This document shows positions 1-35,989 of a DNA stretch of 64,000 nucleotides, in pieces. This DNA comes from Euprymna scolopes (taxonomy: Eukaryota). The notes below the pieces were generated by a model, which was not told the origin of the DNA, did not search any database, and saw nothing but the letters and a program-made list of their open reading frames with translations. Every line of letters starts with the position of its first letter. The first letter of the stretch is position 1. Location: assembly GCA_053919585.1 (NCBI GenBank), contig CM132796.1, one strand, 5' to 3'. A program made the position numbers and the translations under genes.

Positions 1-3000
1 TGCAAAAGTTTTGTATAGCACATCTTCAAACATTTTGTATATCACATCTGCAAAAGTTTTGTATATCACATCTGCAAAAGTTTTGTATATCACATCTGCA
101 AAAGTTTTGTATATCACATCTGAAAAGGTTTTGTATATCACATCTGCAAAAGTTTTGTATATCACCTCTGCAAAATATTTGTACATCACATCTGCAAAAG
201 TTTTGTACATTACATCTGCAAAAGTTTTGTATATCACATCTGCAAAAGTTTTGTATATCACATCTGCAAAAGTTTTGTACATTACATCTGCAAACGTTTT
301 GTACATTACATCTGCAAAAGTTTTGTACATAATATCTGCAAAAGTTTTGTACATTACATCTGCCAACGTCTTGTACATTACATCTGCAAACGTTTTGTAC
401 ATTACATCTGCAAAAGTTTTGTACATTACATCAGCAAAAGTTTTGTACATTACATCTGCAAAAGTTTTGTATATCACATCTGCAAAAGTTTTGTACATTA
501 TATCTTCAAAAGTTTTGTACATTACATCTGCAAAAGTTATTTATATTACATCTGCAAAAGTTTTGTACAATACATCTGCAAAAGTTTTGTACATTATATC
601 TGCCAAAGTTTTGTACATTAAATCTGCAAACGTTTTGTACATTACATCTGCAAAAGTTTTGTACATTACATCTGCAAACGTTTTGCACATTACATCTGCA
701 AAAGTTTTGTATATCACACGTGCAAAAGTTTTGTACATTACATCTGCAAAACTTTTGTATATCACATCTGCAAAAGTTTTGTACATTACATCTGCAAAAG
801 TTTTGTACATTTCATCTGCAAAAGTTTTGTACATTACATCTGCAAAAGTTTTGTATATAACATCTGCAAAAGTTTTGGATATCACATCTGCAAAGGTTTT
901 GTATATCACATCTGCAAAAGTTTTGTATATAACATCTTCAAAAGTTTTGTATATCACATCTGCAAAAGTTTTGTATATCACATCTGCAAAGGTTTTGTAT
1001 ATCACATCTGAAAAAGTTTTGTATATCACCTCTGCAAAATTTTTGTATATCACATCTGCAAAAGTTTTGTACATTACATCTGCAAAAGTTTTGTACATTA
1101 CATCTGCAAAAGTTTTGTATATCACATCTGCAAAAGTTTTGTATATCACATGTGCAAAAGTTTTGTACATTACATCTGCAAAAGTTTTGTACATCACATC
1201 TGCAAAAGTTTGGTACATTACATCTGCCAACGTTTTGTACATCACATCTGCAAAACTTTTGTACATTACATCTGCAAAAGTTTTGTACATCAGATCTGCA
1301 AATGTTTTGTACATTACATCTGCAAAAGTTTTGTATATCACATCTGCTAAAGTTTTGTACATTACATCTGCAAAAGTTTTGTATATCACATCTGCAAAGA
1401 TTTTGTATATCACATCTGCAAAAGTTTTGTATATCACATCTGCAAAAGTTTTGTATATCACATCTGCAAAAGTTTTGTATATCACATCTGCAAAAGTTTT
1501 GTATATCACATCTGCAAAAGTTTTGTATATCACATCTGCAAAAGTTTTGTACATTACATCTGCAAACGTTTTGCACATTACATCTGCAAAAGTTTTGTAC
1601 ATAATATCTGCAAAAGTTTTGTACATTACATCTGCCAACGTCTTGTACATTACATCTGCAAACGTTTTGTACATTACATCTGCAAAAGTTTTGTACATTA
1701 CATCAGCAAAAGTATTGTACATTACATCTGCAAAAGTTTTGTATATCACATCTGCAAAAGTTTTGTACATTATATCTTCAAAAGTTTTGTACATGACATC
1801 TGCAAAAGTTATTTATATTACAGCTGCAAAAGTTTTGTACAATACATCTGCAAAAGTTTTGTACATTATATCTGCCAAAGTTTTGTACATTACATCTGCA
1901 AAAGTTTTGTACATTACATCTGCAAAAGTTTTGTACATTACATCTGCAAACGTTTTGCACATTACATCTGCAAAAGTTTTGTATATCATACGTGCAAAAG
2001 TTTTGTACATTACATCTGAAAAACTTTTGTATATCACATCTGCAAAAGTTGTGTACATTACATCTGCAAGAGTTTTGTACATTACATCTGCAAAAGTTTT
2101 GTACATTACATCTGCAAAAGTTTTGTATATAACATCTGCAAAAGTTTTGGATATCACATCTGCAAAGGTTTTGTATATCACATCTGCAAAAGTTTTGTAT
2201 ATAACATCTTCAAAAGTTTTGTATATCACATCTGCAAAAGTTTTGTATATCACATCTGCAAAGGTTTTGTATATCACATCTGCAAAAGTTTTGTATATCA
2301 CATCTGCAAAAGTTTTGTATATCACATCTGCAAAAGTTTTGTATAGCACATCTTCAAACATTTTGTATATCACATCTGCAAAAGTTTTGTATATCACATC
2401 TGCAAAAGTTTTGTATATCACATCTGCAAAAGTTTTGTATATCACATCTGAAAAGGTTTTGTATATCACATCTGCAAAAGTTTTGTATATCACCTCTGCA
2501 AAATATTTGTACATCACATCTGCAAAAGTTTTGTACATTACATCTGCAAAAGTTTTGTATATCACATCTGCAAAAGTTTTGTATATCACATCTGCAAAAG
2601 TTTTGTACATTACATCTGCAAACGTTTTGTACATTACATCTGCAAAAGTTTTGTACATAATATCTGCAAAAGTTTTGTACATTACATCTGCCAACGTCTT
2701 GTACATTACATCTGCAAACGTTTTGTACATTACATCTGCAAAAGTTTTGTACATTACATCAGCAAAAGTTTTGTACATTACATCTGCAAAAGTTTTGTAT
2801 ATCACATCTGCAAAAGTTTTGTACATTATATCTTCAAAAGTTTTGTACATTACATCTGCAAAAGTTATTTATATTACATCTGCAAAAGTTTTGTACAATA
2901 CATCTGCAAAAGTTTTGTACATTATATCTGCCAAAGTTTTGTACATTAAATCTGCAAACGTTTTGTACATTACATCTGCAAAAGTTTTGTACATTACATC

Positions 3001-3850
3001 TGCAAACGTTTTGCACATTACATCTGCAAAAGTTTTGTATATCACACGTGCAAAAGTTTTGTACATTACATCTGCAAAACTTTTGTATATCACATCTGCA
3101 AAAGTTTTGTACATTACATCTGCAAAAGTTTTGTACATTTCATCTGCAAAAGTTTTGTACATTACATCTGCAAAAGTTTTGTATATAACATCTGCAAAAG
3201 TTTTGGATATCACATCTGCAAAGGTTTTGTATATCACATCTGCAAAAGTTTTGTATATAACATCTTCAAAAGTTTTGTATATCACATCTGCAAAAGTTTT
3301 GTATATCACATCTGCAAAGGTTTTGTATATCACATCTGAAAAAGTTTTGTATATCACCTCTGCAAAATTTTTGTATATCACATCTGCAAAAGTTTTGTAC
3401 ATTACATCTGCAAAAGTTTTGTACATTACATCTGCAAAAGTTTTGTATATCACATCTGCAAAAGTTTTGTATATCACATGTGCAAAAGTTTTGTACATTA
3501 CATCTGCAAAAGTTTTGTACATCACATCTGCAAAAGTTTGGTACATTACATCTGCCAACGTTTTGTACATCACATCTGCAAAACTTTTGTACATTACATC
3601 TGCAAAAGTTTTGTACATCAGATCTGCAAATGTTTTGTACATTACATCTGCAAAAGTTTTGTATATCACATCTGCTAAAGTTTTGTACATTACATCTGCA
3701 AAAGTTTTGTATATCACATCTGCAAAGGTTTTGTATATCACATCTGCAAAAGTTTTGTATATCACATCTGCAAAAGTTTTGTATATCACATCTGCAAAAG
3801 TTTTGTATATCACATCTGCAAAAGTTTTGTATATCACATCTGCAAAAGTT
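1..3850. repeat. Higher-order duplication in the satellite, offset 2328 bp (97 monomers), with an inner 1272-bp (53-monomer) duplication
   Basis: The rare-variant string GTATAGCACATCTTCAAACATTTTG occurs at 13 and 2341. Identical ORF pairs 506/2834 and 1150/3478, and a near-identical ORF at 1778. Right boundary approximate. Confidence 0.9.
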
Positions 3851-5220
3851 TTGTATATCACATCTGCAAAAGTTTTGTATATCACATCTGCAAAAGTTTT
3901 GTATATCACATCCGCAAAAGTTTTGTATATCACATCTGCAAAAGGTTTGTATATCACATCTGCAAAATTTTTGTATATCACATCTGCAAAAGTTTTGTAT
4001 ATAACATCTGCAAAAGTTTTGTACATTTCATCTGCAAATGTTTTGTACATTACATCTCCAAAAGTTTTGTATATCACATCTGCAAAAGTTTTGTATATCA
4101 CATGAGCAAAAGTTTTGTACATTACATCTGCAAAGGTTTTGTACATCACATCTGCAAACGTTTTGTACATTACACCTGCAAACGTTTTGTATATCACATC
4201 TGCAAAACTTTTGTACATTACATCTTCAAAAGTTTTGTACATCAGATCTGCAAAAGTTTTGTACATTACATCTGCAAAAGTTTTGTATATCACATCTGCT
4301 AAAGTTTTGTATATCACATCTGCAAAAGTTTTGTATATCACATCTGCAAAAGTTTTTTACATTACATCTGCAAAAATTTTGTATATCACATCTGCAAAAG
4401 TTTTGTATATCACATCTGCAAAGGTTTTGTATATCACATCTGCAAAAGTTTTGTATATCACCTCTGCAAAATTTTTGTACATCACATCTGCAAAATATTT
4501 GTACATTACATCTGAAAAAGTTTTGTATATCACATCTGCAAAAGTTTTGTATATCACATGTGCAAAAGTTTTGTACATTACATCTGCAAACGTTTTGTAC
4601 ATTACATCTGCAAAAGTTTTGTACATTACATCTGCAAACGTTTTGTATATCACATCTGCCAACGTCTTGTACATTACATCTGCAAACGTTTTGTACATTA
4701 CATCTGCAAAAGTTTTGTACATTACATCAGCAAAAGTTTTGTATATTACATCTGCAAAAGTTTTGTATATCACATCTGCAAAAGTTTTGTACATCACATC
4801 TGCAAAGGTTTTGTACATTACATCTGCAAAAGTTTTGTATATTACATGTGCAAAAGTTTTGTATATCACATCTGCAAAAGTTTTGTACATTACATCTGCA
4901 AAAGTTTTGTACATTACATCTACAAAAGTTTTGTACATTACATCTGCAAAAGTTTTGTACATTACATCTGCAAAAGTGTTGTACATTAAATCTGCGAAAG
5001 TTTTGCACATTACATCTGCAAAAGTTTTGTATATCACATCTGATAAAGTTTTGAACATTACATCTGCAAAATTTTTGTATATCACATCTGCAAAAGTTTT
5101 GTACATTACATCTGCAAAAGTTTTGTATATCACATCTGCAAATGTTCTGTACATTACATCTGCAAAAATTTGTATATCACATCTGCAAAACTTTTGTATA
5201 TCCCATCTGTAAAAGTTTTG

Positions 5221-5249
5221 TGTATTATTATACAAACAACGTGACAGCG

Positions 5250-5289
<40 letters not shown>

Positions 5290-5321
5290 ATTCGCTGTCA
5301 CGGTGTTTGTATAAATTTACC
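5221..5321. mobile_element. MITE-like non-autonomous DNA transposon carrying telomeric repeats, inserted in the satellite
   Basis: 22-bp inverted repeats at 5228-5249 (TTATACAAACAACGTGACAGCG) and 5293-5314 with 1 mismatch, extending imperfectly to the ends. AAGTTTTG(T) is duplicated at 5213-5220(1) and 5322-5329(30). Removing the insert and one TSD copy restores an intact monomer. Confidence 0.85.
5250..5288 (+). repeat. Interstitial telomeric repeat (TTAGGG)3 TTTAGGG (TTAGGG)2 TT
   Basis: Read directly. TTAGGG is the ancestral metazoan telomere motif. Confidence 0.97.
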
Positions 5322-8300
5322 AAGTTTTGTATATCACATCTGCAAAAGTTTTGTATATCACATCTGCAAAGGTTTTGTATATCACATCTGCAAAAGCTTT
5401 GTATATCACATCTGCAAAAGTTTTGTATATTACATCTGCAAAAGTTTTGTATATCACATCTGCAAAAGTTTTGTATATCACATCTGCAAAAGTTTTGTAT
5501 ATCACATCTGCAAAAGTTTTGTATATTACATCTGCAAAAGTTTTGTATATCACATCTGCAAAGGTTTTGTATATCACATCTGAAAAAGTTTTGTATATCA
5601 CCTCTGCAACATTTTTGGTATATAACATCTTCAAAAGTTTTGTACATTACATCTGACAAAGTTTTGTACATTACATCTGCAAACGTTTTGTATATCACAT
5701 CTGCAAAAGTTTTGTATATCACATCTGCAAAAGTTTTGTACATTACATCTGCAAAAGTTTTGTACATCACATCTGCGAAACCTTTGTACATTACCTCTGC
5801 AAAAGTTTTGTACATCAGGTCTGCAAATGTCTTGTACATTACATCTGCAAAAGTTTTGTATATCACATCTGCCAAAGTTTTGTACATTACATCTGCAAAG
5901 GTTTTGTACATTACATCTGCAAAAGTTTTGTACATTACATCTGACAAAAGTTTTGTATATTACATCTGCAAAAGTGTTGCACATTACATCTGCAAAAGTT
6001 TTGTATATCACATGTGCAAAAGTTTTGTACATTACATCTACAAAAGTTTTGTATATCACATCTGCAAACGTTTTGTACATTACATCTGCAACGGTTTTGT
6101 ATATCACATCTGCAAAAGTTTTGGATATCACATCTGCAAAAGTTTTGTATATCACATCTGCAAAAGTTTTGTATATCACATCTTCAAAAGTTTTGTATAT
6201 CACATCTGCAACAGTTTTGTATATCACATCTGCAAGGGTTTTGTATATCACATCTGCAAATGTTTTGTATATCACATCTGCAAAGGTTTTGTATATCACA
6301 TCTGAAAAAGTTTTGTATATCACCTCTGCAAAATTTTTGTATATCACATCTGCAAAAGTTTTGTACATTACATCTGCAAATGTTTTGTACATTACATCTG
6401 CAAAAGTTTTGTATATCACATCTTCAAAAGTTTTGTATATCACATGTGCAAAAGTTTTGTACATTACATCTGCAAATGTTTTGTACATCACATCTGCAAA
6501 AGTTTGGTACATTACATCTGCAAACGTTTTGTACATCACATCTGCAAAACATTTGTACATTACATCTGCAAAAGTTTTGTACATCAGATCTGCAAATGTT
6601 TTGTACATTACATCTGCAAAAGTTTTGTATATCACATCTGCTAAAGTTTTGTACATTACATCTGCAAAAGTTTTGTATATCACATCTGCAAAAGTTTTGT
6701 ATATCACACCTGCAAAGGTTTTGTATATCACATCTGCAAAAGTTTTGTATATCGCATCTGCAAAAGTTGCGTATATCACATCTGCAAAAGTTTTGTATAT
6801 CACATCTGCAAAAGTCTTGTATATCACATCTGCAAAAGTTTTGTATATCATATCTGCAAAAGTTTTGTATATCACATCCGCAAAAGTTTTGTATATCACA
6901 TCTGCAAAAGGTTTGTATATCACATCTGCAAAATTTTTGTATATCACATCTGCTAAAGTTTTGTATATAACATCTGCAAAAGCTTTGTATATCACATCTG
7001 CTAAAGTTTTGTATATCACATCTGCAAAAGTTTTGTATATCACATGTGCCAAAGTTTTGTATATCACATCTGCAAAAGTTTTGTACATTACATCAGCAAA
7101 GGTTTTGTACATTACATCTGCAAAAGTTTCGTACATTACATCTGCAAAAGTTTTGTATATCACATCTGCAAAAGTTTTGTACATTACATCTGCAAAAGTT
7201 TTGTATATCACATCTGCAAAAGTTTTGTACATTACATCTGCAAAAGTTTTGTATATCACATCTGCAAAAGTTTTGTACATTACATCTGCAAGAATTTTGT
7301 ATATCACATCTGCAAAAGTTTTGTATATCACATCTGCTAAAGCTTTGTATATCACATCTGCAAAAGTTTTGTATATCACATCTTCAAAAGTTTTGTATAT
7401 CACATCTGCAAAAGTTTTGTATATCACATCTGCAAAAGTTTTGTATATCACATCTGCAAAAGTTTTGTATATCACATCTGCAAAGGTTTGGTATATCACA
7501 TCTGCAAAAGTTTTGTATATCACCTCTGCAAAATTTTTGTACATCACATCTGCAAAATTTTTGTACATTACATCTGCAAAAGTTTTGTATATCACATCTG
7601 CAAAAGTTTTGTATATCACATGTGCAAAAGTTTTGTACATTACATCTGCAAACGTTTTGTACATTACATCTGCAAAAGTTTTGTACATTACATCTGCAAA
7701 TGTTTTGTACATTACATCTGTCAACGTCTTGTACATTACATCTGCAAACGTTTTGTACATTACATCTGCAAAAGTTTTGTACATTACATCAGCAAAAGTT
7801 TTGTACATTACATCTGCAAAAGTTTTGTATATCACATCTGCAAAAGTTTTGTACATTACATCTGCAAAGGTTTTGTACATTACATCTGCAAAAGTTTTGT
7901 ATATTACATCTGCAAAAGTTTTGTATATCACATCTGCAAAAGTTTTGTACATTACATCTGCAAAAGTTTTGTACATTACATCTGCAAAAGTTTTGTACAT
8001 TACATCTGCAAAAGTTTTGTACATTACATCTGCAAAAGTTTTGTACATTACATCTGCAAAAGTTTTGTACATTACATCTGCAAAAGTTTTGTACATTACA
8101 TCTGCAAACGTTTTGCACATTACATCTGCAAAAGTTTTGTATATCACATCTGCAAAATTTTTCTACATTACATCTGCAAAAGTTTGGTATATCACATCTG
8201 AAAAAGTTTTGTACATTACATCTGCAAAAGTATTGTATATCACATCTGCAAAGGTTTTGTATATCACATCTGAAAAAGTTTTGTATATCACCTCTGCAAA

Positions 8301-11300
8301 ATTTTTGTATATCACATCTTCAAAGGTTTTGTACATTACATCTGCAAAAGTTTTGTACATTACATCTGCAAAAGTTTTGTATATCACATCTGCAAAAGTT
8401 TTGTATATCACATGTGCAAAAGTTTTGTACATTACATCTGCAAAAGTTTTGTACATCACATCTGCAAAAGTTTTGTACATTACATCTGCAAACGTTTTGT
8501 ACATCACATCTGCGACACTTTTGTACATTACATCTGCAAAAGTTTTTTACATCAGATCTGCAAATGTTTTGTACATTCCATCTGCAAAAGTTTTGTATAT
8601 CACATCTGCTAAAGTTTTGTACATTACATCAGCAAAAGTTTTGTATATCACATCTTCAAAAGCTTTGTATATCACATCTGCAAAAGTTTTGTATATCAAA
8701 TCTGCAAAAGTTTTGTATATCACATCTGCAAAAGTTTTGTATATCACATCTGCAAAAGTTTTTTATATCACATCTGCAAAAGTTTTGTATATCACATCTG
8801 CAAATGTTTTGTATATCACATCCGCAAAAGTTTTGTATATCACATCTGCAAAAGGTTAGTATATCACATCTGCAAAAGTTTTGCATATCACATCTGCAAA
8901 AGTTTCGTATATCACATCTGCAAAAGTTTTGTACATTACATCTGCAAAAGTTTTGTACATTACATCTGCAACAGTTTTGTATATCACATCTGCAAAAGTT
9001 TTGTATATCACATGTGCAAAGGTTTTGTACATTACATCTGCAAAAGTTTTGTACATCACATCTGCAAACGTTTTGTACATTACACCTGCAAACGTTTTGT
9101 ACATCACATCTGCAAAGCTTTTGTACATTACATCTGCAAAAGTTTTGTACATCAGATCTGCAAACGTTTTATACATTACATCTGAAAAAGTTTTGTATAT
9201 CACATCTGCAAAAGTATTGTATATCACATCTGCAAAAGTTTTGTATATAACATCTGCAAAAGTTTTGTATATCACATGTGCAAAAGTTTTGTATATCACA
9301 TCTGCAAAAGTTTTGTACATTACATCTGCAAAAGTTTTGTACATTACATCTGCAAAAGTTTTGTATATCACATCTGCAAAAGTTTTGTATATCACATCTG
9401 CAAAAGTTTTGTACATTACATCTGCAAAAGTTTTGTACATTACATCTGCAAATGTTTTGTACATCACATCTGCAAAAGTTTTGTACATTACATCTGCAAA
9501 AGATTTGTATATCACATCTGCAAAATTTTGTACATTACATCTGCAAAAATTTTGTTTATCACATCTGCAAAAGTTTTGTATATCACATCTGCAAAAGTTT
9601 TGTATATCACATCTGCAAAAGTTTTGTATATCACATCTTCAAAAGTTTTGTATATCACATCTGCAAAAGTTTTGTATATCACATCTGCAAAAGTTTTGTA
9701 TATCACATCTGCAAAAGTTTTGTATATCACATCTGCAAAGGTTTTGTATATCAAATCTGCAAAAGTTTTGTATATCACATCTGCAAAAGTTTTGTATATC
9801 ACATCTGCAAAAGTTTTGTATATCACATCTGCAAAAGTTTTGTATATCACATCTGCAAATGTTTTGTGTATCACATTTGCAAAAGTTTTGTATATCACAT
9901 CTGCAAAAGTTTTGTACATTACATCTGCAAAGGTTTTGTACATTACATCTGCAAAAGTTTTGTATATCACATCTGCAAAAGTTTTGTATATCACATGTGC
10001 AAATGTTTTGTACATTACATCTGCAAAAGTTTTGTACATCACATCTGAAAACGTTTTGTACATTACACCTGCAAACGTTTTGTACATCACATCTGAAAAA
10101 CTTTTGTACATTACATCTGCAAAAGTGTTGTACATCAGATCTGCAAACGTTTTATACATTACATCTGCAAAAGTTTTGTATATCACATCTGCTAAAGTTT
10201 CTATATCACATCTGCAAAAGTTTTGTATACCACATCTGCAAAGGTTTTGTGTATCACATCTGCAAAAGTTTTGTATATCACCTCTGCATCACCTCTGCAA
10301 AATTTTTGTATATCACATCTGCAAAAGTTTTGTACATTACATCTGCAAAATTTTTGTATATCACATCTGCAAAAGTTTTGTACATTACATCTGCAAAAAT
10401 TTTGTATATCACATCTGCAAACGTTTTGTATATCACATCTGCAAAAGTTTTGTATATCACATCTGCAAAAGTTTTGTATATCACATCTTCAAAAGTTTTG
10501 TATATCACATCTGCAAAAGTTTTGTATATCACATCTGCAAAAGTTTTGTATATCACATTTGCAAAAGTTTTGTATATCACATCCGCAAAGGTTTTGTATA
10601 TCACATCTGCAAAAGTTTTGTATATCACCTCTGCAAAATGTTTGTACATCACATCTGCAAAATTTTTGTACATTACATCTGCAAAAGTTTTGTATATCAC
10701 ATCTGCAAAAGTTTTGTATATCACATGTGCAAAAGTTTTGTACATTACATCTGCAAACGTTTTGTACATTACATCTGCAAAAGTTTTGTACATTACATCT
10801 GCAAATGGTATGTACATTACATCTGTCAACGTCTTGTACATTACATCTGCAAACGTTTTGTACATTACATCTGCAAAAGTTTTGTACATTACATCAGCAA
10901 AAGTTTTGTACATTACATCTGCAAAAGTTTTGTATATCACATCTGCAAACGTTTTGTACATTACATCTGCAAAAGTTTTGTATATTACATCTGCAAAAGT
11001 TTTGTATATCACATCTGCAAAAGTTTTGTACATTACATCTGCAAAAGTTTTGTACATTACATCTGCAAAACTTTTGTACATTACATCTGCAAAAGTTTTG
11101 TACATTACATCTGCAAAAGTTTTGTACATAACATCTGCAAATGTTTTGTACATTACATCTGCAAAGTTCTGTACATTACATCTGCAAAAGTTTTGTACAT
11201 TACATCTGCAAAAGTTTTGTACATTACATCTGCAAAAGTTTTGCACATTACATCTGCAAAAGTTTTGTATGTCACATCTGCAAAAGTTTTGTACATTACA

Positions 11301-14300
11301 TCTGCAAAAGTTTTGTATATCACATCTGCAAATGTTTTGTACATTACATCTGCAAAAGTTTTGTATATCACATCTGCGAAAGTTTTGTACATTACATCTG
11401 CAAAAGTATTGTATATCACATCTGCAAATGTTTTGTATATCACATCTGAAAAAGTTTTGTATATCCCCCCTGCAAAATTTTTGTATATCACATCTTCAAA
11501 GGTTTTGTACATTACATCTGCAAAAGTTTTGTACATTACATCTGCAAAAGTTTTGTATATCACATCTGCAAAAGTTTTGTATATCACATGTTCAAAAGTT
11601 TTGTACATTACATCTGCAAAACTTTTGTACATCACATCTGCAAAAGTTTTGTAATTTACATCTGCAAACGTTTTGTACATCACATCTGCGAAACTTTTGT
11701 ACATTACATCTGCAAAAGTTTTGTACATCAGATCTGCAAAAGTTTTGTACATTACATCTGCAAATGTTTTGTACATCACATCTGCAACAGTTTTGTACAT
11801 TACATCTGCAAACGTTTTGTACATCACATCTGCGAAACTTTTGTACATTACATCTGCAAAAGTTTTGTATATCACATCTTCAAAAGTTTTGTATATCACA
11901 TCTGCAAAAGTTTTGTATATCACATCTGCAACAGTTTTGTATATCACATCTGCAAAAGTTTTGTATATCACATCTGCAAAAGTTTTTTATATCACATCTG
12001 AAAAAGTTTTGTATATCACATCTGCAAAAGTTTTGTATATCACATCCGCAAAAGTTTTGTATATCACATCTGCAAAAGGTTTGTATATCACATCTGCAAA
12101 GTTTTTGCATATCACATCTGCAAAAGTTTCGTATATCACATCTGCAAAAGTTTTGTACATTACATCTGCAAAAGTTTTGTACATTACATCTGCAAAAGTT
12201 TTGTATATCACATCTGCAAAAGTTTTGTATATCACATGTGCAAAAGTTTTGTACATTACATCTGCAAAAGTTTTGTACATCACATCTGCAAACGTTTTGT
12301 ACATTACACCTGCAAACGTTTTGTACATCAGATCTGCAAAACTTTTGTACATTACATCTTCAAAAGTTTTGTACATCAGATCTGCAAACGTTTTATACAT
12401 TACATCTGCAAAAGTTTTGTATATCACATCTGCTAAAGCCTTGTATATCACATCTGCAAAAGTTTTGTATATCACATCTGCACAAGTTTTGTATATCACA
12501 TGTGCAAAAGTTTTGTATATTACATCTGCAAAAGTTTTGTACATTACATCTGCAAATGTTTTGTACATTACATCTGCAAACGTTTTGTATATCACATCTT
12601 CAAAAGTTTTGTATATCACATCTGAAAAAGTTTTGTACATTGCATCTGCAAAAGTTTTGTACATTACATCTGCAAAAGTTTTGTACATTACATCTGCAAA
12701 AGTTTTGTACATTACATCTGCAAAAGTTTTGTATATCACATCTGCAAAAGTTTTGTACATTACATCTGCAAAAGTTTTGTATATCACATCTGCAAAAGTT
12801 TTGTACATTACATCTGCAAAAGTTTTGTATATAACATCTGCAAAAGTTTTGGATATCACATCTGCAAAGGTTTTGTATATCACATCTGCAAAAGTTTTGT
12901 ATATCACATCTCCAAAGTTTTGCATATCACATCTGCAAAAGTTTTGTATATCACATCTGCAAAAGTTTTGTATATCACATCTGCAAAAGTTTTGTACATT
13001 ATCTCTGCAAAAGTTTTGTACATAATATCTGCAAAAGTTTTGTACATTACATCTGCAAAAGTTTTGTACATTACATCTGCAAAAGTTTTGTATATCACAT
13101 CTGCAAAAGTTTTGTACATTACATCTGCAAAAGTATTGTATATCACATCTGCAAAGGCTTTGTATATCACATCTGAAAAAGTTTTGTATATCACCTTTGC
13201 AGAATTTGTGTATATCACATCTGCAAAGGTTTTGTATATCACATGTGCAAAAGTTTTGTATATCACATCTGCAAAAGTTTTGTACATTACATCTGCAAAG
13301 GTTTTGTACATTACATTTGCAAATGTTTTGTACATTACATCTGCAAAAGTTTTGTATATCAAATCTGCAAAAGTTTTGTACATTACATCTGCAAAAGTTT
13401 TGTATATCACATCTGCAAAAGTTTTGTACATTAAATCTGCAAAAGTTTTGTATATCACATCTGCAAAAGTTTTGTACATTACATCTGGAAATATTTTGTA
13501 TATCACATCTGCAAAAGTTTTGTATATCACATCTGCAAATGTTTTGTATATCACATCTGCAAAAGTTTTGTATATCACATCTTCAAAAGTTTTGTATATC
13601 ACATCTGCAAAAGTTTTCTATATCACATCTGCAAAAGTTTTGTATATAACATCTGCAAAGGTTTTGTATATCACATCTGCAAAAGTTTTGTATATCACCT
13701 CTGCAAAATTTTTGTACATCACATCTGCAAAGTTTTTGTACATTACATCTGCAAAAGTTTTGTACATTACATCTGCAAAAGTTTTGTATATCACATCTGC
13801 AAAAGTTTTGTATATCACATGTGCAAAAGTTTTGTACATTACATCTGCAAAAGTTTTGTACATCACATCTGCAAAAGTTTGGTACATTACATCTGCAAAC
13901 GTTTTGTACATCACATCTGCGACACTTTTGTACATTACATCTGCAAAAGTTTTTTACATCAGATCTGCAAATGTTTTGTACATTCCATCTGCAAAAGTTT
14001 TGTATATCACATCTGCTAAAGTTTTGTACATTACATCAGCAAATGTTTTGTATATCACATCTTCAATAGTTTTGTATATCACATCTGCAAAAGTTTTGTA
14101 TATCACATCTGCAAAAGTTTTGTATATCACATCTGCAAAAGTTTTGTATATCACATCTGCAAAAGTTTTTTATATCACATCTGCAAAAGTTTTGTATATC
14201 ACATCTGCAAAAGTTTTGTATATCACATCCGCAAAAGTTTTGTATATCACATCTGCAAAAGGTTTGTATATCACATCCGCAAAAGTTTTGCATATCACAT

Positions 14301-17300
14301 CTGCAAAAGTTTCGTATATCACATCTGCAAAAGTTTTGTACATTACATCTTCAAAAGTTTTGTACATTACATCTGAAACAGTTTTGTATATCACATCTGC
14401 AAAAGTTTTGTATATCACATGTGCAAAGGTTTTGTACATTACATCTGCAAAAGTTTTGTACATCACATCTGCAAACGTTTTGTACATTACACCTGCAAAC
14501 GTTTTGTACATCACATCTGCAAAACTTTTGTACATTACATCCTCAAAAGTTTTGTACATCAGATCTGCAAACGTTTTATACATTACATCTGCAAAAGTTT
14601 TGTATATCACATCTGCTAAAGTTTTGTATATCACATCTGCAAAAGTTTTGTATATAACATCTGCAAAAGTTTTATATATCACATGTGCAAAAGTTTTGTA
14701 TATCACATCTGCAAAAGTTTTGTACATTACATCTGCAAAAGTTTTGTACATTACATCTGCAAAAGTTTTGTATATCACATCTGCAAAAGTTTTGTATATC
14801 ACATCTGCAAAAGTTTTGTACATTACATCTGCAAAAGTTTTGTACATGACATCTGCAAATGTTTTGTACATTACATCTGCAAACGTTTTGTACATTACAT
14901 CTGCAAAAGATTTGTATATCACATCTGCAAAACTTTTGTACATTACATCTGCAAAAGTTTTGTATATCACATCTGCAAATGTTTTGTATATCACATCTGC
15001 AAAAGTGTTGTATATCACATCTGCAAAAGTTTTGTATATCACATCTTCAAAAGTTTTGTATATCACATCTGCAAAGGTTTTGTATATCACATCTGCAAAA
15101 GTTTTGTATATCACATGTGCAAAAGTTTTGTATATCACATCTGCAAAGGTTTTGTATATCAAATCTGCAAAAGTTTTGTATATCACATCTGCAAAAGTTT
15201 TGTATATCACATCTGCAAAAGTTTTGTATATCACATCTGCAAAAGTTTTGTATATCTCATCTGCAAAAGTTTTGTATATCACATCCGCAAAAGTTTTGTA
15301 TATCACATCTGCAAATGTTTTGTATATCACATCTGCAAAAGTTTTGTATATCACATCTGCAAAAGTTTTGTATATCACATCTGCAAAAGTTTTGTACATT
15401 ACATCAGCAAAAGTTTTGTACATTACATCTGCAAAAGTTTTGTATATCACATCTGCAAAAGTTTTGTATATCACATGTGCAAATGTTTTGTACATTACAT
15501 CTGCAAAAGTTTTGTACATCACATCTGAAAACGTTTGGTACATTACACCTGCAAACGTTTTGTACATCACATCTGAAAAACTTTAGTACATTACATCTGC
15601 AAAAGTGTTGTACATCAGATCTGCAAACGTTTTATACATTACATCTGCAAAAGTTTTGTATATCACATCTGCTAAAGGTTCTATATCACATCTGCAAAAG
15701 TTTTGTATATCACATCTGCAAAGGTTTTGTGTATCACATCTGCAAAAGTTTTGTATATCACCTCTGCAAAATTTTTGTATATCACATCTGCAAAAGTTTT
15801 GTATATCACATCTGCAAAAATTTTGTATATCACATCTGCAAAAGTTTTGTATATCACATCTGCAAAAGTTTTGTATATCACATCTGCAAAAGTTTTGTAT
15901 ATCACATCTGCAAAAGTTTTGTATATCACATCTGCAAAAGTTTTGTATATCACATCTGCAAAAGTTTTGTATATCACCTCTGCAAAATGTTTGTACATCA
16001 CATCTGCAAAATTTTTGTACATTACATCTGCAAAAGTTTTGTATATCACATCTGCAAAAGTTTTGTATATCACATGTGCAAAAGTTTTGTACATTACATC
16101 TGCAAACGTTTTGTACATTACATCTGCAAAAGTTTTGTACATTACATCTGCAAATGTTTTGTACATTACATCTGTCAACGTCTTGTACATTACATCTGCA
16201 AACGTTTTGTACATTACATCTGCAAAAGTTTTGTACATTACATCAGCAAAAGTTTTGTACATTACATCTGCAAAAGTTTTGTATATCACATCTGCAAAAG
16301 TTTTGTACATTACATCTGCAAAGGTTTTGTACATTACATCTGCAAAAGTTTTGTATATTACATCTGCAAAGGTTTTGTATATCAAATCTGCAAAAGTTTT
16401 GTATATCACATCTGCAAAAGTTTTGTATATCACATCTGCAAAAGTTTTGTATATCACATCTGCAAAAGTTTTGTATATCTCATCTGCAAAAGTTTTGTAT
16501 ATCACATCCGCAAAAGTTTTGTATATCACATCTGCAAATGTTTTGTATATCACATCTGCAAAAGTTTTGTATATCACATCTGCAAAAGTTTTGTATATCA
16601 CATCTGCAAAAGTTTTGTACATTACATCAGCAAAAGTTTTGTACATTACATCTGCAAAAGTTTTGTATATCACATCTGCAAAAGTTTTGTATATCACATG
16701 TGCAAATGTTTTGTACATTACATCTGCAAAAGTTTTGTACATCACATCTGAAAACGTTTTGTACATTACACCTGCAAACGTTTTGTACATCACATCTGAA
16801 AAACTTTTGTACATTACATCTGCAAAAGTGTTGTACATCAGATCTGCAAACGTTTTATACATTACATCTGCAAAAGTTTTGTATATCACATCTGCTAAAG
16901 TTTCTATATCACATCTGCAAAAGTTTTGTATATCACATCTGCAAAGGTTTTGTGTATCACATCTGCAAAAGTTTTGTATATCACCTCTGCAAAATTTTTG
17001 TATATCACATCTGCAAAAGTTTTGTACAGATCATCTGCAAAAATTTTGTATATCACATCTGCAAAAGTTTTGTATATCACATCTGCAAAAGTTTTGTATA
17101 TCACATCTGCAAAAGTTTTGTATATCACATCTGCAAAAGTTTTGTATATCACATCTGCAAAAGTTTTGTATATCACATCTGCAAAAGTTTTGTATATCAC
17201 ATTTGCAAAAGTTTTGTATATCATATCCGCAAAGGTTTTGTATATCACATCTGCAAAAGTTTTGTATATCACCTCTGCAAAATGTTTGTACATCACATCT

Positions 17301-17749
17301 GCAAAATTTTTGTACATTACATCTGCAAAAGTTTTGTATATCACATCTGCAAAAGTTTTGTATATCACATGTGCAAAAGTTTTGTACATTACATCTGCAA
17401 ATGTTTTGTACATTACATCTGCAAAAGTTTTGTACATTACATCTGCAAATGTTTTGTACATTACATCTGTCAACGTCTTGTACATTACATCTGCAAACGT
17501 TTTGTACATTACATCTGCAAAAGTTTTGTACATTACATCTGCAAAATTTTGTACATTACATCTGCAAAGGTTTTGTACATTACATCTGCAAAAGTTTTGT
17601 ACATTACATCTGCAAAAGTTCTGTACATTACATCTGCAAAAGTTTTGTACATTAAATCTGCAAAAGTTTTGTACATTACATCTGCAAAATTTTGTATATC
17701 ACATCTGCAAAAGTTTTGTACATCACATCTGCAAAAGTTTTGTACATTA

Positions 17750-20700
17750 AATCTGCAAAAGTTTTGTATATCACATCTGCAAAAGTTTTGTATATCACAT
17801 GTTCAAAAGTTTTGTACATTACATCTGCAAATCTTTTGTACATCACATCTGCAAAAGTTTTGTACATTACATCTGCAAACGTTTTGTACATCACATCTGC
17901 GAAACTTTTGTACATTACATCTGCAAAAGTTTTGTACATTACATCTGCAAACGTTTTGTACATTACATCTGCAAATGTTTTGTACATCACATCTGCAACA
18001 GTTTTGTACATTACATCTGCAAACGTTTTGTACATCACATCTGCGAAACTTTTGTACATTACATCTGCAAAAGTTTTGTATATCACATCTTCAAAAGTTT
18101 TGTATATCACATCTGCAAAAGTTTTGTATATCACATCTGCAAAAGTTTTGTATATCACATCTGCAAAAGTTTTGTATATTACATCTGCAACAGTTTTGTA
18201 TATCACATCTGCAAAAGTTTTGTATATCACATCTGCAAAAGTTTTTTATATCACATATGCAAAAGTTTTGTATATCACATCTGCAAAAGTTTTGTATATC
18301 ACATCCGCAAAAGTTTTGTATATCACATCTGCAAAAGGTTTGTATATCACATCTGCAAAGTTTTTGCATATCACATCTGCAAAAGTTTCGTATATCACAT
18401 CTGCAAAAGTTTTGTACATTACATCTGCAAAAGTTTTGTACATTACATTTGCAAAAGTTTTGTATATCACATGTGCAAATGTTTTGTATATCACATGTGC
18501 ACAAGTTTTGTACATTACATCTGCAAAAGTTTTGTACATCACATCTGCAAACGTTTTGTACATTACACCTGCAAACGTTTTTTACATCCGATCTGCAAAA
18601 CTTTTGTACATTACATCTTCAAAAGTTTTGTACATCAGATCTGCAAACGTTTTATACATTACATCTGCAAAAGTTTTGTATATCACATCTGCTAAAGCTT
18701 TGTATATCACATCTGCAAAAGTTTTGTATATCACATCTGCAAAAGTTTTGTATATCACATGTGCAAAAGTTTTGTATATTACATCTGCAAAAGTTTTGTA
18801 CATTACATCTGCAAAAGTTTTGTACATTACATCTGCAAAATTTTGTATATCACATCTTCAAAAGTTTTGTATATCACATCTGAAAAAGTTTTGTACATTG
18901 CATCTGCAAAAGTTTTGTACATTACATCTGCAAAAGTTTTGTACATTACATCTGCAAAAGTTTTGTACATTACATCTGCAAAGGTTTTGTATATCACATC
19001 TGCAAAGGTTTTGTACATTACATCTGCAAAAGTTTTGTATATCACATCTGCAAAGGTTTTGTACATTACATCTGCAAAAGTTTTGTATATAACATCTGCA
19101 AAAGTTTTGGATATCACATCTGCAAAGGTTTTGTATATCACATCTGCAAAAGTTTTGTATATCACATCTCCAAAGTTTTGTATATCACATCTGCAAAAGT
19201 TTTGTATATCACATCTGCAAAAGTTTTGTATATCACATCTGCAAAAGTTTTGTAAATTACATCTGCAAAATTTTTGTACATAACATCTGCAAAAGTTTTG
19301 TACATTACATCTGCAAAAGTTTTGTACATTACATCTGCAAAAGTTTTGTATATCACATCTGCAAAAGTTTTGTACATTACATCTGCAAAAGTATTGTATA
19401 TCACATCTGCAAAGGTTTTGTATATCACATCTGAAAGAGTTTTGTATATCACCTCTGCAAAATTTGTGTATATCATATCTGCAAAGGTTTTGTATATCAC
19501 ATGTGCAAAAGTTTTGTATATCACATCTGCAAAAGTTTTGTACATTACATCTTCAAAGGTTTTGTACATTACATTTGCAAAAGTTTTGTACATTACATCT
19601 GCACATCTGCAAAAGTTTTGTACATTACATCTGCAAAAGTTTTGTATATCACATCTGCAAAAGTTTTGTACATTACATCTGCAAAAGTTTTGTATATCAC
19701 ATCTGCAAAAGTTTTGTACATTACATCTGCAAATATTTTGTATATCACATCTGCAAAAGTTTTGTATATCACATCTGCAAATGTTTTGTATATAACATCT
19801 GCAAAAGTTTTGTATATCACATCTTCAAAAGTTTTGTATATCACATCTGCAAAAGTTTTGTATATCACATCTGCAAAAGTTTTGTATAGCACATCTGCAA
19901 AGGTTTTGTATATCACATCTGCAAAAGTTTTGTATATCACCTCTGCAAAATTTTTGTACATCACATCTGCAAAGTTTTTGTACATTACATCTGCAAAAGT
20001 TTTGTATATCACATCTGCTTAAGTTTTGTATATCACATGTGCAAAAGTTTTGTACATTACATCTGCAAACGTTTTGTACATTACATCTGCAAAAGTTTTG
20101 TACATTACATCTGCAAATGTTTTGTACATTACATCTGTCAACGTCTTGTACATTACATCTGCAAACGTTTTGTACATTACATCAGCAAAAGTTTTGTACA
20201 TTACATCTGCAAACGTTTTGTACATCACATCTGCGAAACTTTTGTACATTACATCTGCAAAAGTTTTGTACATCAGATCTGCAAAGGTTTTGTACATTAC
20301 ATCTGCAAATGTTTTGTACATCACATCTGCAAAAGTTTTGTACATTACATCTGCAAACGTTTTGTACATCACATCTGCGAAACTTTTGTACATTACATCT
20401 GCAAAAGTTTTGTATATCACATCTTCAAAAGTTTTGTATATCACATCTGCAAAAGTTTTGTATATCACATCTGCAAAAGTTTTGTATATCACATCCGCAA
20501 AAGTTTTGTATATTACATCTGCAACAGTTTTGTATATCACATCTGCAAATGTTTTGTATATCACATCTGCAAAAGTTTTTTATATCACATATGCAAAAGT
20601 TTTGTATATCACATCTGCAAAAGTTTTGTATATCACATCCGCAAAAGTTTTGTATATCACATCTGCAAAAGGTTTGTATAACACATCTGCAAAGTTTTTG

Positions 20701-23700
20701 CATATCACATCTGCAAAAGTTTCGTATATCACATCTGCAAAAGTTTTGTACATTACATCTGCAAAAGTTTTGTACATTACATCTGCAAAAGTTTTGTATA
20801 TCACATGTGCAAATGTTTTGTATATCACATGTGCAAAAGTTTTGTACATTACATCTGCAAAAGTTTTGTACATCACATCTGCAAACGTTTTGTACATTAC
20901 ACCTGCAAACGTTTTTTACATCCGATCTGCAAAACTTTTGTACATTACATCTTCAAAAGTTTTGTACATCAGATCTGCAAACGTTTTATACATTACATCT
21001 GCAAAAGTTTTGTATATCACATCTGCTAAAGCTTTGTATATCACATCTGCAAAAGTTTTGTATATCACATCTGCAAAAGTTTTGTATATCACATGTGCAA
21101 AATTTTGTATATTACATCTGCAAAAGTTTTGTACATTACATCTGCAAAAGTTTTGTACATTACATCTGCAAAAGTTTTGTATATCACATCTTCAAAAGTT
21201 TTGTATATCACATCTGAAAAAGTTTTGTACATTGCATCTGCAAAAGTTTTGTACATTACATCTGCAAAAGTTTTGTACATTACATCTGCAAAAGTTTTGT
21301 ACATTACATCTGCAAAGGTTTTGTATATCACATCTGCAAAGGTTTTGTACATTACATCTGCAAAAGTTTTGTATATCACATCTGCAAAGGTTTTGTACAT
21401 TACATCTGCAAAAGTTTTGTATATAACATCTGCAAAAGTTTTGGATATCACATCTGCAAAGGTTTTGTATATCACATCTGCAAAAGTTTTGTATATCACA
21501 TCTCCAAAGTTTTGTATATCACATCTGCAAAAGTTTTGTATATCACATCTGCAAAAGTTTTGTATATCACATCTGCAAAAGTTTTGTAAATTACATCTGC
21601 AAAATTTTTGTACATAACATCTGCAAAAGTTTTGTACATTACATCTGCAAAAGTTTTGTACATTACATCTGCAAAAGTTTTGTATATCACATCTGCAAAA
21701 GTTTTTGTACATTACATCTGCAAAAGTATTGTATATCACATCTGCAAAGGTTTTGTATATCACATCTGAAAGAGTTTTGTATATCACCTCTGCAAAATTT
21801 GTGTATATCATATCTGCAAAGGTTTTGTATATCACATGTGCAAAAGTTTTGTATATCACATCTGCAAAAGTTTTGTACATTACATCTGCAAAGGTTTTGT
21901 ACATTACATTTGCAAAAGTTTTGTACATTACATCTGCACATCTGCAAAAGTTTTGTACATTACATCTGCAAAAGTTTTGTATATCACATCTGCAAAAGTT
22001 TTGTACATTACATCTGCAAAAGTTTTGTATATCACATCTGCAAAAGTTTTGTACATTACATCTGCAAATATTTTGTATATCACATCTGCAAAAGTTTTGT
22101 ATATCACATCTGCAAATGTTTTGTATATCACATCTGCAAAAGTTTTGTATATCACATCTTCAAAAGTTTTGTATATCACATCTGCAAAAGTTTTGTATAT
22201 CACATCTGCAAAAGTTTTGTATAGCACATCTGCAAAGGTTTTGTATATCACATCTGCAAAAGTTTTGTATATCACCTCTGCAAAATTTTTGTACATCACA
22301 TCTGCAAAGTTTTTGTACATTACATCTGCAAAGGTTTTGTATATCACATCTGCTTAAGTTTTGTATATCACATGTGCAAAAGTTTTGTACATTACATCTG
22401 CAAACGTTTTGTACATTACATCTGCAAAAGTTTTGTACATTACATCTGCAAATGTTTTGTACATTACATCTGTCAACGTCTTGTACATTACATCTGCAAA
22501 CGTTTTGTACATTACATCAGCAAAAGTTTTGTACATTACATCTGCAAAAGTTTTGTATATCACATCTGCAAAAGTTTTGTACATTACATCTGCAAAGGTT
22601 TTGTACATTACATCTGCAAAAGTTTTGTATATTACATCTGCAAAAGTTTTGTATATCACATCTGCAAAGGTTTTGTACATTACATCTGCAAAAGTTTTGT
22701 ACATTACATCTGCAAAAGTTTTGTACATTACATCTGCAAAAGTTTTGTACATTACATCTGCAAAAGTTTTGTACATAACATCTGCAAAAGTTTTGTACAT
22801 TACATCTGCAAAAGTTTTGTACATTACATCTGCAAAAGTTTTGTACATTACATCTGCAAAAGTTTTGTACATTACATCTGCAAAAGTTTTGCACATTACA
22901 TCTGCAAAAGTTTTGTATATCACATCTGCGAAAGTTTTGTACATTACATCTGCAAATGTTTTGTATATCACATCTGCAAAAGTTTTGTACATTACATCTG
23001 CAAACGTTTTGTATATCACATCTGCAAAAGTTTTGTACATCACATCTGCAAAAGTATTGTATATCACATCTGCAAAGGTTTTGTATATCACATCTGAAAA
23101 AGTTTTGTATATCACATCTGCAAAATTTGTGTACATCACATCTTCAAAGGTTTTGTACATTACATCTGCAAAAGTTTTGTATATCACATCTGCAAAAGTT
23201 TTGTATATCACATCTGCAAAAGTTTTGTATATCACATTTGCAAAAGTTTTGTATATCATATCCGCAAAGGTTTTGTATATCACATCTGCAAAAGTTTTGT
23301 ATATCACCTCTGCAAAATGTTTTTACATCACATCTGCAAAATTTTTGTACATTACATCTGCAAAAGTTTTGTATATCACATCTGCAAAAGTTTTGTATAT
23401 CACATGTGCAAAAGTTTTGTACATTACATCTGCAAATGTTTTGTACATTACATCTGCAAAAGTTTTGTACATTACATCTGCAAATGTTTTGTACATTACA
23501 TCTGTCAACGTCTTGTACATTACATCTGCAAACGTTTTGTACATTACATCTGCAAAAGTTTTGTACATTACATCTGCAAAAGTTTTGTACATTACATCTG
23601 CAAAGGTTTTGTACATTACATCTGCAAAAGTTTTGTACATTACATCTGCAAAAGTTCTGTACATTACATCTGCAAAAGTTTTGTACATTAAATCTGCAAA

Positions 23701-35600: not shown

Positions 35601-35989
35601 TGTACATTACATCTGCAAACGTTTTGTACATTACATCGGCAAAAGTTTTGTATATCACATCTGCAAAAGTTTTGTATATCACATGTGCAAAGGTTTTGTA
35701 CATTACATCTGCAAAAGTTTTGTACATCACATCTGCAAAAGTTTTGTACATTACATCTGCAAACGTTTTGTACATCACATCTGCGAAACTTTTGTACATT
35801 ACATCTGCAAACGTTTTGTACATCCGATCTGCAAAAGTTTTGTACATTACATCTGCAAAAGTTTTGTACATCAGATCTGCAAACGTTTTATACATTACAT
35901 CTGCAAAAGTTTTGTATATCACATCTGCTAAAGTTTTGTATATCACATCTGCAAAAGTTTTGTATATCACATCTGCAAAAGTTTTGTAT

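What the first reader, a model, noticed from the sequence alone, without database searches (positions are those of the whole stretch)
5213..5330. 100-bp MITE whose whole interior is telomeric repeat, inserted in the satellite
Seen: 22-bp inverted repeats (21/22 match) enclose six TTAGGG-type units plus TTAATT. A TSD AAGTTTTG(T) flanks it, and the satellite continues in the same orientation and register. This points to a transposition product, not a telomere fusion or break healing. The right end reads GGTAAA.. inward. GG termini with an 8-9 bp TSD fit Merlin or Mutator-like superfamilies (inference). Six G3 tracts could form a G-quadruplex in the loop of a hairpin and could bind telomere proteins. 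Such an element would be a mobile source of interstitial telomeric sequence and potential telomere seeds.
Basis: partly seen in the sequence, partly recalled or inferred. Interest (0 to 1): 0.75.

Follow-up and report, generated by a model that had tools for sequence, protein, structure and literature searches.

The report
Transposon that spreads telomere repeats
The 101-bp insert in the satellite is a real member of a young family of about 2,250 tiny non-autonomous DNA transposons whose cargo is the host's own telomere repeat, so in this genome telomere-like DNA is scattered inside chromosomes by transposition.

Summary
The element is window 5221-5321 (101 bp). It has a 29-nt inverted repeat at each end, six telomeric units plus TTAATT inside, and an exact 8-bp duplication (AAGTTTTG) on each side. 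Taking out the element and one copy of the duplication restores the 24-bp satellite register.

It is not a one-off. The 22-nt repeat core occurs 2,250 times forward and 2,273 times reverse in the 5.9-Gb genome, against 1 and 0 for the control. I read 94 complete copies. All are short, and 73 have exact 8-bp duplications; most of the rest differ only by T-run slips. In 81 copies the interior is wholly telomeric, 12-146 bp long in steps of six. The other 13 carry about 66 nt of unique sequence plus 1-4 telomeric units.

GG ends and 8-bp duplications fit the Merlin superfamily. Every Merlin element I could delimit in this genome shows the same two features. I found no autonomous partner with these ends.

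Chromosome C1 starts with a genuine array of the same repeat, written there as CCCTAA.

The G-quadruplex, protein-binding and telomere-seed ideas stay untested.

Two earlier first-reader notes of this scan describe the same kind of element elsewhere in this genome.

The parts
5213..5220 (+). Left copy of the 8-bp target-site duplication, AAGTTTTG
   Evidence: Identical to 5322-5329. The boundary was set from the family consensus of 94 copies.
5221..5249 (+). Left terminal inverted repeat, 29 nt. It has two substitutions against the family consensus GGTATTATTATACAAACACCGTGACAGCG: G1 to T and C19 to A.
   Evidence: 84 of 94 sampled copies carry the exact consensus.
5250..5292 (+). Interior of 43 bp: six telomeric units (TTAGGG x3, TTTAGGG, TTAGGG x2) followed by TTAATT. 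TTAATT is the remnant of the longer inverted repeat seen in subfamily B.
   Evidence: 75 of 81 subfamily-A copies end in TTAATT and 72 of 81 start with TTAGGG.
5293..5321 (-). Right terminal inverted repeat, 29 nt, of the end variant ...GTATAAATTTACC. Read inward it begins GGTAAATTTATAC.
   Evidence: 30 of 94 sampled copies share this variant.
5322..5329 (+). Right copy of the 8-bp target-site duplication, AAGTTTTG
1..40798 (+). Host 24-bp satellite array (about 1,699 units, with 48- and 72-bp higher-order periods). Its uninterrupted units serve as empty sites for the insertion.
   Evidence: The register is restored when 5221-5329 is removed.

Best explanation
[quoted passage not shown] It codes for nothing.

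How it most likely moves:
- A DDE transposase made elsewhere, most likely of the Merlin superfamily, binds the 29-nt terminal repeats.
- It cuts the element out and pastes it into a staggered 8-bp cut.
- Repair of that cut gives the 8-bp duplication.
- Insertion prefers a T-rich 8-mer and is oriented relative to it.

The telomeric array between the arms is a passenger. It most likely began as a short patch of telomeric repeats at the joint of an internal deletion in a longer element, which is the layout of subfamily B. The remaining unique sequence was then lost, giving subfamily A, which includes the window copy. The array has since grown and shrunk in six-base steps, by slippage or by repair copying across the repeat.

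Shown: the family, its ends, the duplications, the target preference, the array-length series, the shared variant maps and the genuine telomere motif.
Inferred: Merlin as the mobilising enzyme, the telomerase origin of the patch and the mechanism of length change.
For: - Copy number: the 22-nt core with up to 2 mismatches gives 2,250 forward and 2,273 reverse hits, against 1 and 0 for the reversed control.
- Structure: I read 94 complete copies, all short. 73 have exact 8-bp duplications, 7 look longer only because of T runs, and most of the rest show single slips.
- Homogeneity: the left repeat is identical to the consensus in 84 of 94 copies. At least 30 subfamily-B interiors are 100% identical.
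- Array length: subfamily-A interiors run 12, 18, 24, 30, 36 ... 146 bp.
- Shared maps: copies of different length share positions of variant units.
- Empty site: the satellite register is restored on removal.
- Merlin: the definition is terminal GG, repeats of 24-462 bp and duplications of 8 or 9 bp (PMC8101967). PF12762 gives 2,018 first-look candidates, all 150 scored lie above the cut-off, and many have open frames of about 300-336 aa. Fourteen delimited Merlin copies, in about six families, all have GG ends and 8-bp duplications.
- Telomere motif: C1:1-3000 holds 438 CCCTAA units.
- Hairpin: as single-stranded DNA the arms pair at -21 kcal/mol, z -8.7.
Against: - No autonomous element with these ends was found. 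All of about 98 sampled sites are short or truncated.
- The repeat followed by anything other than the two known interiors gave only 6 hits, all point-mutated short copies. The continuations TA and AT were not tested.
- The subfamily-B unique part followed by a base other than T gave only 3 hits.
- 30 Merlin loci hold no such repeat. The best likeness to a local Merlin family is 16/29 (p 0.005 before correction for about 24 comparisons).
- hAT, P, Novosib, Zisupton and some Mutator-like elements also make 8-bp duplications.
- Oriented insertion (61 T-rich against 15 A-rich) is not expected of a symmetric cut-and-paste reaction.
- The sample is biased towards copies with one perfect 22-mer.
- There is no read-level or population evidence of current mobility.
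Confidence: 0.82

Rival explanations
1. It is a MITE, but it is mobilised by a different superfamily that also makes 8-bp duplications: hAT, P, Novosib, Zisupton or an 8-bp Mutator-like element.
For: - The 8-bp duplication is not unique to Merlin.
- No Merlin element with matching ends was found.
Against: - The ends are GG (GGTAT / GGTAA). By established knowledge of these families, hAT ends follow YARNG and P ends begin CA.
- Merlin is by definition GG-ended (PMC8101967).
- All local Merlin families show GG ends plus 8-bp duplications.
- Merlin transposase genes are very abundant and many are open.
Confidence: 0.12
2. The telomeric tract at this site was made here, by telomerase-mediated repair of a break, chromosome healing or an old fusion, and the flanking inverted repeats are incidental.
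For: - Short interstitial telomeric tracts in primates and rodents are explained in this way (PMC7215372; PMC9693754).
- An untested first-reader note reports a telomeric patch at a deletion elsewhere in this genome (s1-269035).
Against: - The same 29-nt arms enclose telomeric arrays at about 2,250 sites.
- Each site read has its own 8-bp duplication.
- Here the satellite is duplicated by exactly 8 bp and is otherwise intact.
- Local repair cannot produce this pattern. It may explain how the first element arose, but not this locus.
Confidence: 0.02
3. The insert is an assembly or sequencing-adapter artefact.
For: - It lies inside a 40-kb satellite, where assemblies are weakest.
- A hairpin-shaped insert resembles a library adapter.
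- No read check could be run.
Against: - There are thousands of copies in unique and repeated DNA on many chromosomes, each with its own duplication, together with subfamilies and inherited variant maps.
- This copy carries two private substitutions and a duplication that is in register.
Confidence: 0.02

Closest known systems
Merlin-superfamily MITEs (Merlin: Feschotte 2004, as summarised in PMC8101967; Merlin-like MITEs with 8-bp duplications and 24-34-bp repeats in Nosema, PMC4405373)
   Same: - Terminal 5'-GG.
- A 29-nt inverted repeat, within the 24-462 bp range.
- An exact 8-bp duplication.
- Small, non-coding and high in copy number.
- The host genome is full of DDE_Tnp_IS1595 genes.
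   Different: - No partner with matching ends was found.
- The interior is the host telomeric repeat, of variable length.
- Insertion is oriented relative to a T-rich target.
MITEs carrying hitchhiking microsatellites, such as the (GTCY)n MITEs of Lepidoptera (Coates et al. 2011, listed in PMC6947457), and tandem-repeat-containing MITE-like elements of bivalves (BIV160, same review)
   Same: A short inverted-repeat element whose core is a tandem repeat. The repeat is copied around the genome with the element and varies in unit number.
   Different: Here the repeat is the host's functional telomere motif, and in 86% of sampled copies it is the whole interior. It is not an arbitrary microsatellite.
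Short interstitial telomeric sequences inserted at double-strand breaks (Nergadze and colleagues; PMC7215372)
   Same: A short (TTAGGG)n tract inside a chromosome. This mechanism is a plausible origin of the founding patch in subfamily B.
   Different: Those tracts are single events without inverted repeats or a fixed duplication. Here the tract is multiplied by transposition. Reviews only proposed this route for interstitial tracts (PMC9693754).
Telomere-repeat-bearing retroelements (endonuclease-deficient Penelope-like elements such as Athena; from my own knowledge, not checked here)
   Same: Mobile elements that carry host telomeric repeats.
   Different: Those are reverse-transcribing elements that attach to chromosome ends. 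This one is a DNA element with inverted repeats and 8-bp duplications, and it inserts internally.

Membership tests
MITE (non-autonomous class II element with terminal inverted repeats) | Terminal inverted repeats | tested here: met
   29-nt arms. The core matches 21/22 in the window, and the consensus is shared by 94 copies.
MITE (non-autonomous class II element with terminal inverted repeats) | Target-site duplication of fixed length, with a different sequence at each copy | tested here: met
   73 of 94 copies have an exact 8-bp duplication. Most of the rest are T-run slips or single mismatches.
MITE (non-autonomous class II element with terminal inverted repeats) | Short, non-coding and high in copy number | tested here: met
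   Elements are 70-204 bp, with about 2,250 copies.
MITE (non-autonomous class II element with terminal inverted repeats) | Empty site that shows a single copy of the duplicated bases | tested here: met
   Neighbouring satellite units are uninterrupted, and removing 5221-5329 restores the 24-bp register. Orthologous empty sites in other individuals were not testable.
MITE (non-autonomous class II element with terminal inverted repeats) | An autonomous relative with the same ends | tested here: inconclusive
   None was found among about 98 sampled sites, 30 Merlin loci and three exclusion patterns.
Merlin superfamily | Duplication of 8 or 9 bp | tested here: met
   8 bp. Definition from PMC8101967.
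Merlin superfamily | Inverted repeats of 24-462 bp with a conserved terminal 5'-GG | tested here: met
   29 nt, with GG at both ends in the consensus. The window copy's left G1 is mutated to T.
Merlin superfamily | Mobilised by, or derived from, an element that encodes a DDE_Tnp_IS1595 transposase | tested here: inconclusive
   The genome has 2,018 first-look PF12762 candidates. About six local families have GG ends and 8-bp duplications. None has these ends, and the best likeness is 16/29.
hAT superfamily | 8-bp duplication | tested here: met
hAT superfamily | Ends of the form YARNG (established knowledge, not taken from a paper read here) | tested here: not met
   The ends read GGTAT and GGTAA.
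Interstitial telomeric sequence made in place by break repair or fusion | A single-site event without transposon ends or a fixed duplication | tested here: not met
   The same ends and an 8-bp duplication recur at thousands of sites.

The most novel reading that the evidence does not exclude
The family was born when telomerase patched an internal deletion of a Merlin-type transposon. The resulting MITE then copied that patch to more than 2,000 sites. On this reading, transposition is the main source of interstitial telomeric DNA in this genome, rather than fusion or repair at each site. The arrays of 1-23 units in the loop of a 29-bp hairpin would then act as dispersed landing sites for telomere-binding proteins or as seeds for new telomeres after breakage. 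The array might also help the element itself, for instance by giving it its orientation.
Probability: 0.25. Interest if true: 0.8.

Novelty: new variant of a known kind. Interest (0 to 1): 0.6.

Why it matters
Interstitial telomeric sequences are usually read as scars of chromosome fusions or of telomerase-assisted break repair. They are used that way to reconstruct karyotype history. Reviews mention spread by transposable elements only as a proposal (PMC9693754).

Here one DNA-transposon family, about 2,250 copies strong, carries arrays of 1 to about 23 host telomere units to T-rich sites all over the chromosomes, including into satellite DNA. In such a genome most short interstitial telomeric tracts say nothing about past fusions. 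FISH or motif scans for telomere repeats would mislead.

The family also offers a natural series of identical hairpins with graded numbers of G-tracts. This could be used to test G-quadruplex formation, telomere-protein binding, fragility and new telomere formation in vivo.

Five searches of the held literature found no description of a MITE with a telomeric core. That library is incomplete.

Tried and rejected
- **Autonomous partner by proximity.** I looked for the inverted repeat in 30 Merlin loci and found none.
- **Autonomous partner by exclusion patterns.** The repeat followed by C/G gave 3 hits, and followed by A/T then C/G gave 3 hits. All six are point-mutated short copies. The subfamily-B unique part followed by a base other than T gave 3 hits.
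- **L091.** It looked like a longer element, but its upstream part is another dispersed repeat also present in L060 and L026. It is a truncated copy.
- **Likeness of the repeat to local Merlin families.** The best values are 16/29 ungapped for the L055 family, and a gapped score with p 0.004 for the 1.7-kb family. Neither is significant after correcting for the number of comparisons. No partner is claimed.
- **Diverged relatives of the repeat** in all held loci and the window: none.
- **Sequencing runs.** For the same reason I did not count all (TTAGGG)n tracts in the genome.
- **More loci.** I did not try to get round this.
- **Organism.** It was not identified. I noted only that the genome is 5.9 Gb, with contigs numbered up to at least C46 at chromosome scale, and that its telomere motif is TTAGGG.
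- **Large protein searches, structure prediction and RNA tools** were not used, because nothing here codes for protein or a known RNA.
Full report
**What is at the site.**
Window 1-40798 is a 24-bp satellite of about 1,699 units, 89% matching, with 48- and 72-bp higher-order periods. Inside it, at 5221-5321, lies a 101-bp insert:
- a 29-nt left arm at 5221-5249;
- 43 bp of interior at 5250-5292, made of three TTAGGG, one TTTAGGG, two TTAGGG and then TTAATT;
- a 29-nt right arm at 5293-5321.

The 22-nt cores of the arms match 21/22. This core occurs nowhere else in the window, and none is expected by chance. The 8-mer AAGTTTTG stands on both sides, at 5213-5220 and 5322-5329. If the element and one copy of the 8-mer are removed, the spacing of satellite units across the site falls from 133 to 24, so the register is restored exactly. 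As single-stranded DNA the arms pair into a stem with the G-rich array as loop (-21.0 kcal/mol; shuffles -5.1 ± 1.8; z -8.7).

The family consensus adds three points. The repeat is 29 nt long. The duplication is exactly 8 bp.

**It is one of thousands.**
In the window's own 5.9-Gb assembly the 22-nt core, with up to two mismatches, occurs 2,250 times forward and 2,273 times reverse. The reversed control occurs once and not at all. This means about 2,250 elements.

I read 94 complete copies from chromosomes C1 and C2, a few other contigs and the window:
- All are short; the two arms lie 12-146 bp apart.
- 73 have exact 8-bp duplications. Seven appear longer only because the target is a T run. 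Most of the others differ by a one-base slip in a T run or by one mismatch.
- Each copy has its own duplicated 8-mer.
- The left arm equals the consensus GGTATTATTATACAAACACCGTGACAGCG in 84 of 94 copies.
- The right arm comes in three outer variants: ...GTATAGTTTTACC (53 copies), ...GTATAAATTTACC (30 copies, including the window copy) and the fully symmetric ...GTATAATAATACC (5 copies).

The sample is biased, because the tool lists perfect matches first. Even so, about 68 perfect hits on the 202-Mb C1 alone imply that most copies keep at least one perfect core. The family is young and homogeneous. An adapter or assembly artefact, a fusion scar or a locally healed break cannot give this pattern.

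**Two subfamilies and the origin of the telomeric core.**
In 81 of the 94 copies (subfamily A) the interior is entirely telomeric and ends in TTAATT. Its length runs 12, 18, 24, 30, 36 ... 146 bp with a median of 61, which is one to about 23 units.

The other 13 copies (subfamily B) have this layout:
- next to the left arm, about 66 nt of unique sequence that begins AATTAGTA and ends CTGGG;
- then one to four TTAGGG units;
- then 15-20 nt that end in the inverted complement of AATTAGTA;
- then the right arm.

In B the inverted repeat therefore extends to about 40 nt. The unique 68 nt has 458 first-look candidates in the genome, and at least 30 of them are 100% identical.

B has the classic layout of a MITE made by internal deletion of a longer element, with telomeric repeats at the deletion joint. 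The G strand of those repeats continues from a 3' ...GGG end. This is what telomerase-assisted break repair leaves behind (PMC7215372), so I take it as the likelier origin of the core. It is an inference. A chance microsatellite is the alternative. Subfamily A can be derived from B by loss of the unique 66 nt and of 9 nt on the right, which keeps the TTAATT.

**How the arrays vary.**
Copies of different length share the positions of variant units:
- TTAGGA as the second or third unit;
- a TTTAGGG in the middle;
- TTGGGG further on;
- a ...GGGGTAGGG end.

The arrays therefore changed length along the lineages of the source copies, and not only after insertion. The window copy belongs to the purer lineage, whose only variant is TTTAGGG.

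The motif is the host's real telomere repeat. C1:1-3000 holds 438 CCCTAA units and runs to the end of the contig. The same kinds of variant occur in both places:

| Unit | True telomere, C1 | MITE arrays |
|---|---|---|
| TTTAGGG | about 6% | about 13% |
| TTAGGGG | about 3% | about 6% |

**Which transposase.**
Merlin elements are defined by inverted repeats of 24-462 bp with a conserved terminal 5'-GG and by duplications of 8 or 9 bp (PMC8101967). The element meets both criteria.

The genome is rich in Merlin:
- PF12762 gives 2,018 first-look candidates.
- All 150 that were scored lie above the curated cut-off.
- Many have open frames of 296-336 aa without stops.
- In the 30 loci fetched I could delimit 14 copies, in about six families. 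Every one starts with GG and has an exact 8-bp duplication.

hAT elements also make 8-bp duplications, but their ends (YARNG, established knowledge) do not fit GGTAT / GGTAA.

The link to Merlin is still only structural:
- None of the 30 Merlin loci holds the MITE's repeat.
- The best likeness to a local family is 16/29, or a gapped score with p 0.004. Neither is convincing after allowing for the number of comparisons.
- Three exclusion searches found only point-mutated short copies.
- One candidate longer element (L091) turned out to be a copy truncated by another dispersed repeat.

**An unexplained feature.**
Insertion is oriented. With every copy turned so that the array reads TTAGGG, the duplicated 8-mer has the logo N-W-T-T-T-T-T-T, and T also follows at the next base on the right. 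It is T-rich in 61 copies, A-rich in 15 and tied in 4 (p 1e-7). The four clean copies with fully symmetric ends are all A-rich. The two ends of the common forms differ only at positions 5-9. A symmetric cut-and-paste reaction should not choose an orientation, so either the transposase reads that small difference or something else, possibly the array, sets the direction. The window's target AAGTTTTG fits the preference only loosely.

**What is known.**
MITEs that carry microsatellites are known, for example the (GTCY)n elements of Lepidoptera. Tandem-repeat MITE-like elements are known in bivalves. Both are listed in PMC6947457. Reviews of interstitial telomeric sequences mention spread by transposable elements only as a proposal (PMC9693754). 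Five full-text searches found no MITE with a telomeric core, but the held library is incomplete. I therefore class this as a new variant of a known kind.

Two first-reader notes of this scan (s1-288594 and s1-245074) describe the same kind of element on other pieces of this genome. Another note (s1-269035, untested) reports a telomeric patch at a deletion in a retrotransposon gene, which would fit the proposed origin.

**Limits.**
There is therefore no read-level confirmation of this copy and no polymorphism data. I also did not count all telomeric tracts in the genome.
- The G-quadruplex, protein-binding and telomere-seed ideas remain untested.
- The organism was not identified.

**Verdict.**
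My confidence in the best explanation as a whole is 0.82. Taken separately, I put the transposon nature at about 0.95 and Merlin as the superfamily at about 0.65. Interest is 0.6.

Noticed in passing
L103:170-330 (G000:C2:18233602-18234302): A rearranged copy. The left flank plus the left arm is followed directly by its own reverse complement, forming a perfect palindrome centred in the arm. An A run, two telomeric units and a normal right arm follow. It looks like a foldback or hairpin repair of a break inside the element.
   Followed up: no
L031-L060 (Merlin loci, e.g. L054:1045-2775, L055:425-2096, L034:123-2875): The genome carries at least six Merlin families (1.6-3.2 kb), all with GG ends and exact 8-bp duplications, and many with open transposase frames. 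The inverted repeat of the abundant 1.7-kb family contains a single TTAGGG.
   Followed up: partly
L126 (G000:C1:1-3000): A true telomere at the contig start: 438 CCCTAA units in 3 kb, with about 6% TTTAGGG-type and 3% TTAGGGG-type variant units. The array had not ended at 3 kb.
   Followed up: partly
G000:C1, positions listed: Copies are spread unevenly along C1. There are 6 perfect hits in the first 58 Mb, 17 between 85 and 104 Mb, and many beyond 125 Mb. Some lie in pairs a few hundred bases apart (L023/L024: an A and a B copy 343 bp apart; L029: two copies 850 bp apart).
   Followed up: no
window 51637-55331 and 62104-63996, minus strand: Fragments of retrotransposon pol genes lie beyond the satellite: reverse transcriptase pieces, and an RNase H - zinc-binding - integrase core frame of 442 aa that runs to the window's end. 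GC content rises from 30% to as much as 51% after 42 kb.
   Followed up: partly
L091:1-205, also L060:2375-2569 and L026:2727-2911: Another dispersed repeat of about 200 bp or more, found in many of the fetched loci. In L091 it truncates a subfamily-B copy. It was not classified.
   Followed up: no
window 44452-44463, minus strand: An isolated 12-mer one mismatch away from two telomeric units, outside the satellite. It has no MITE ends near it.
   Followed up: no
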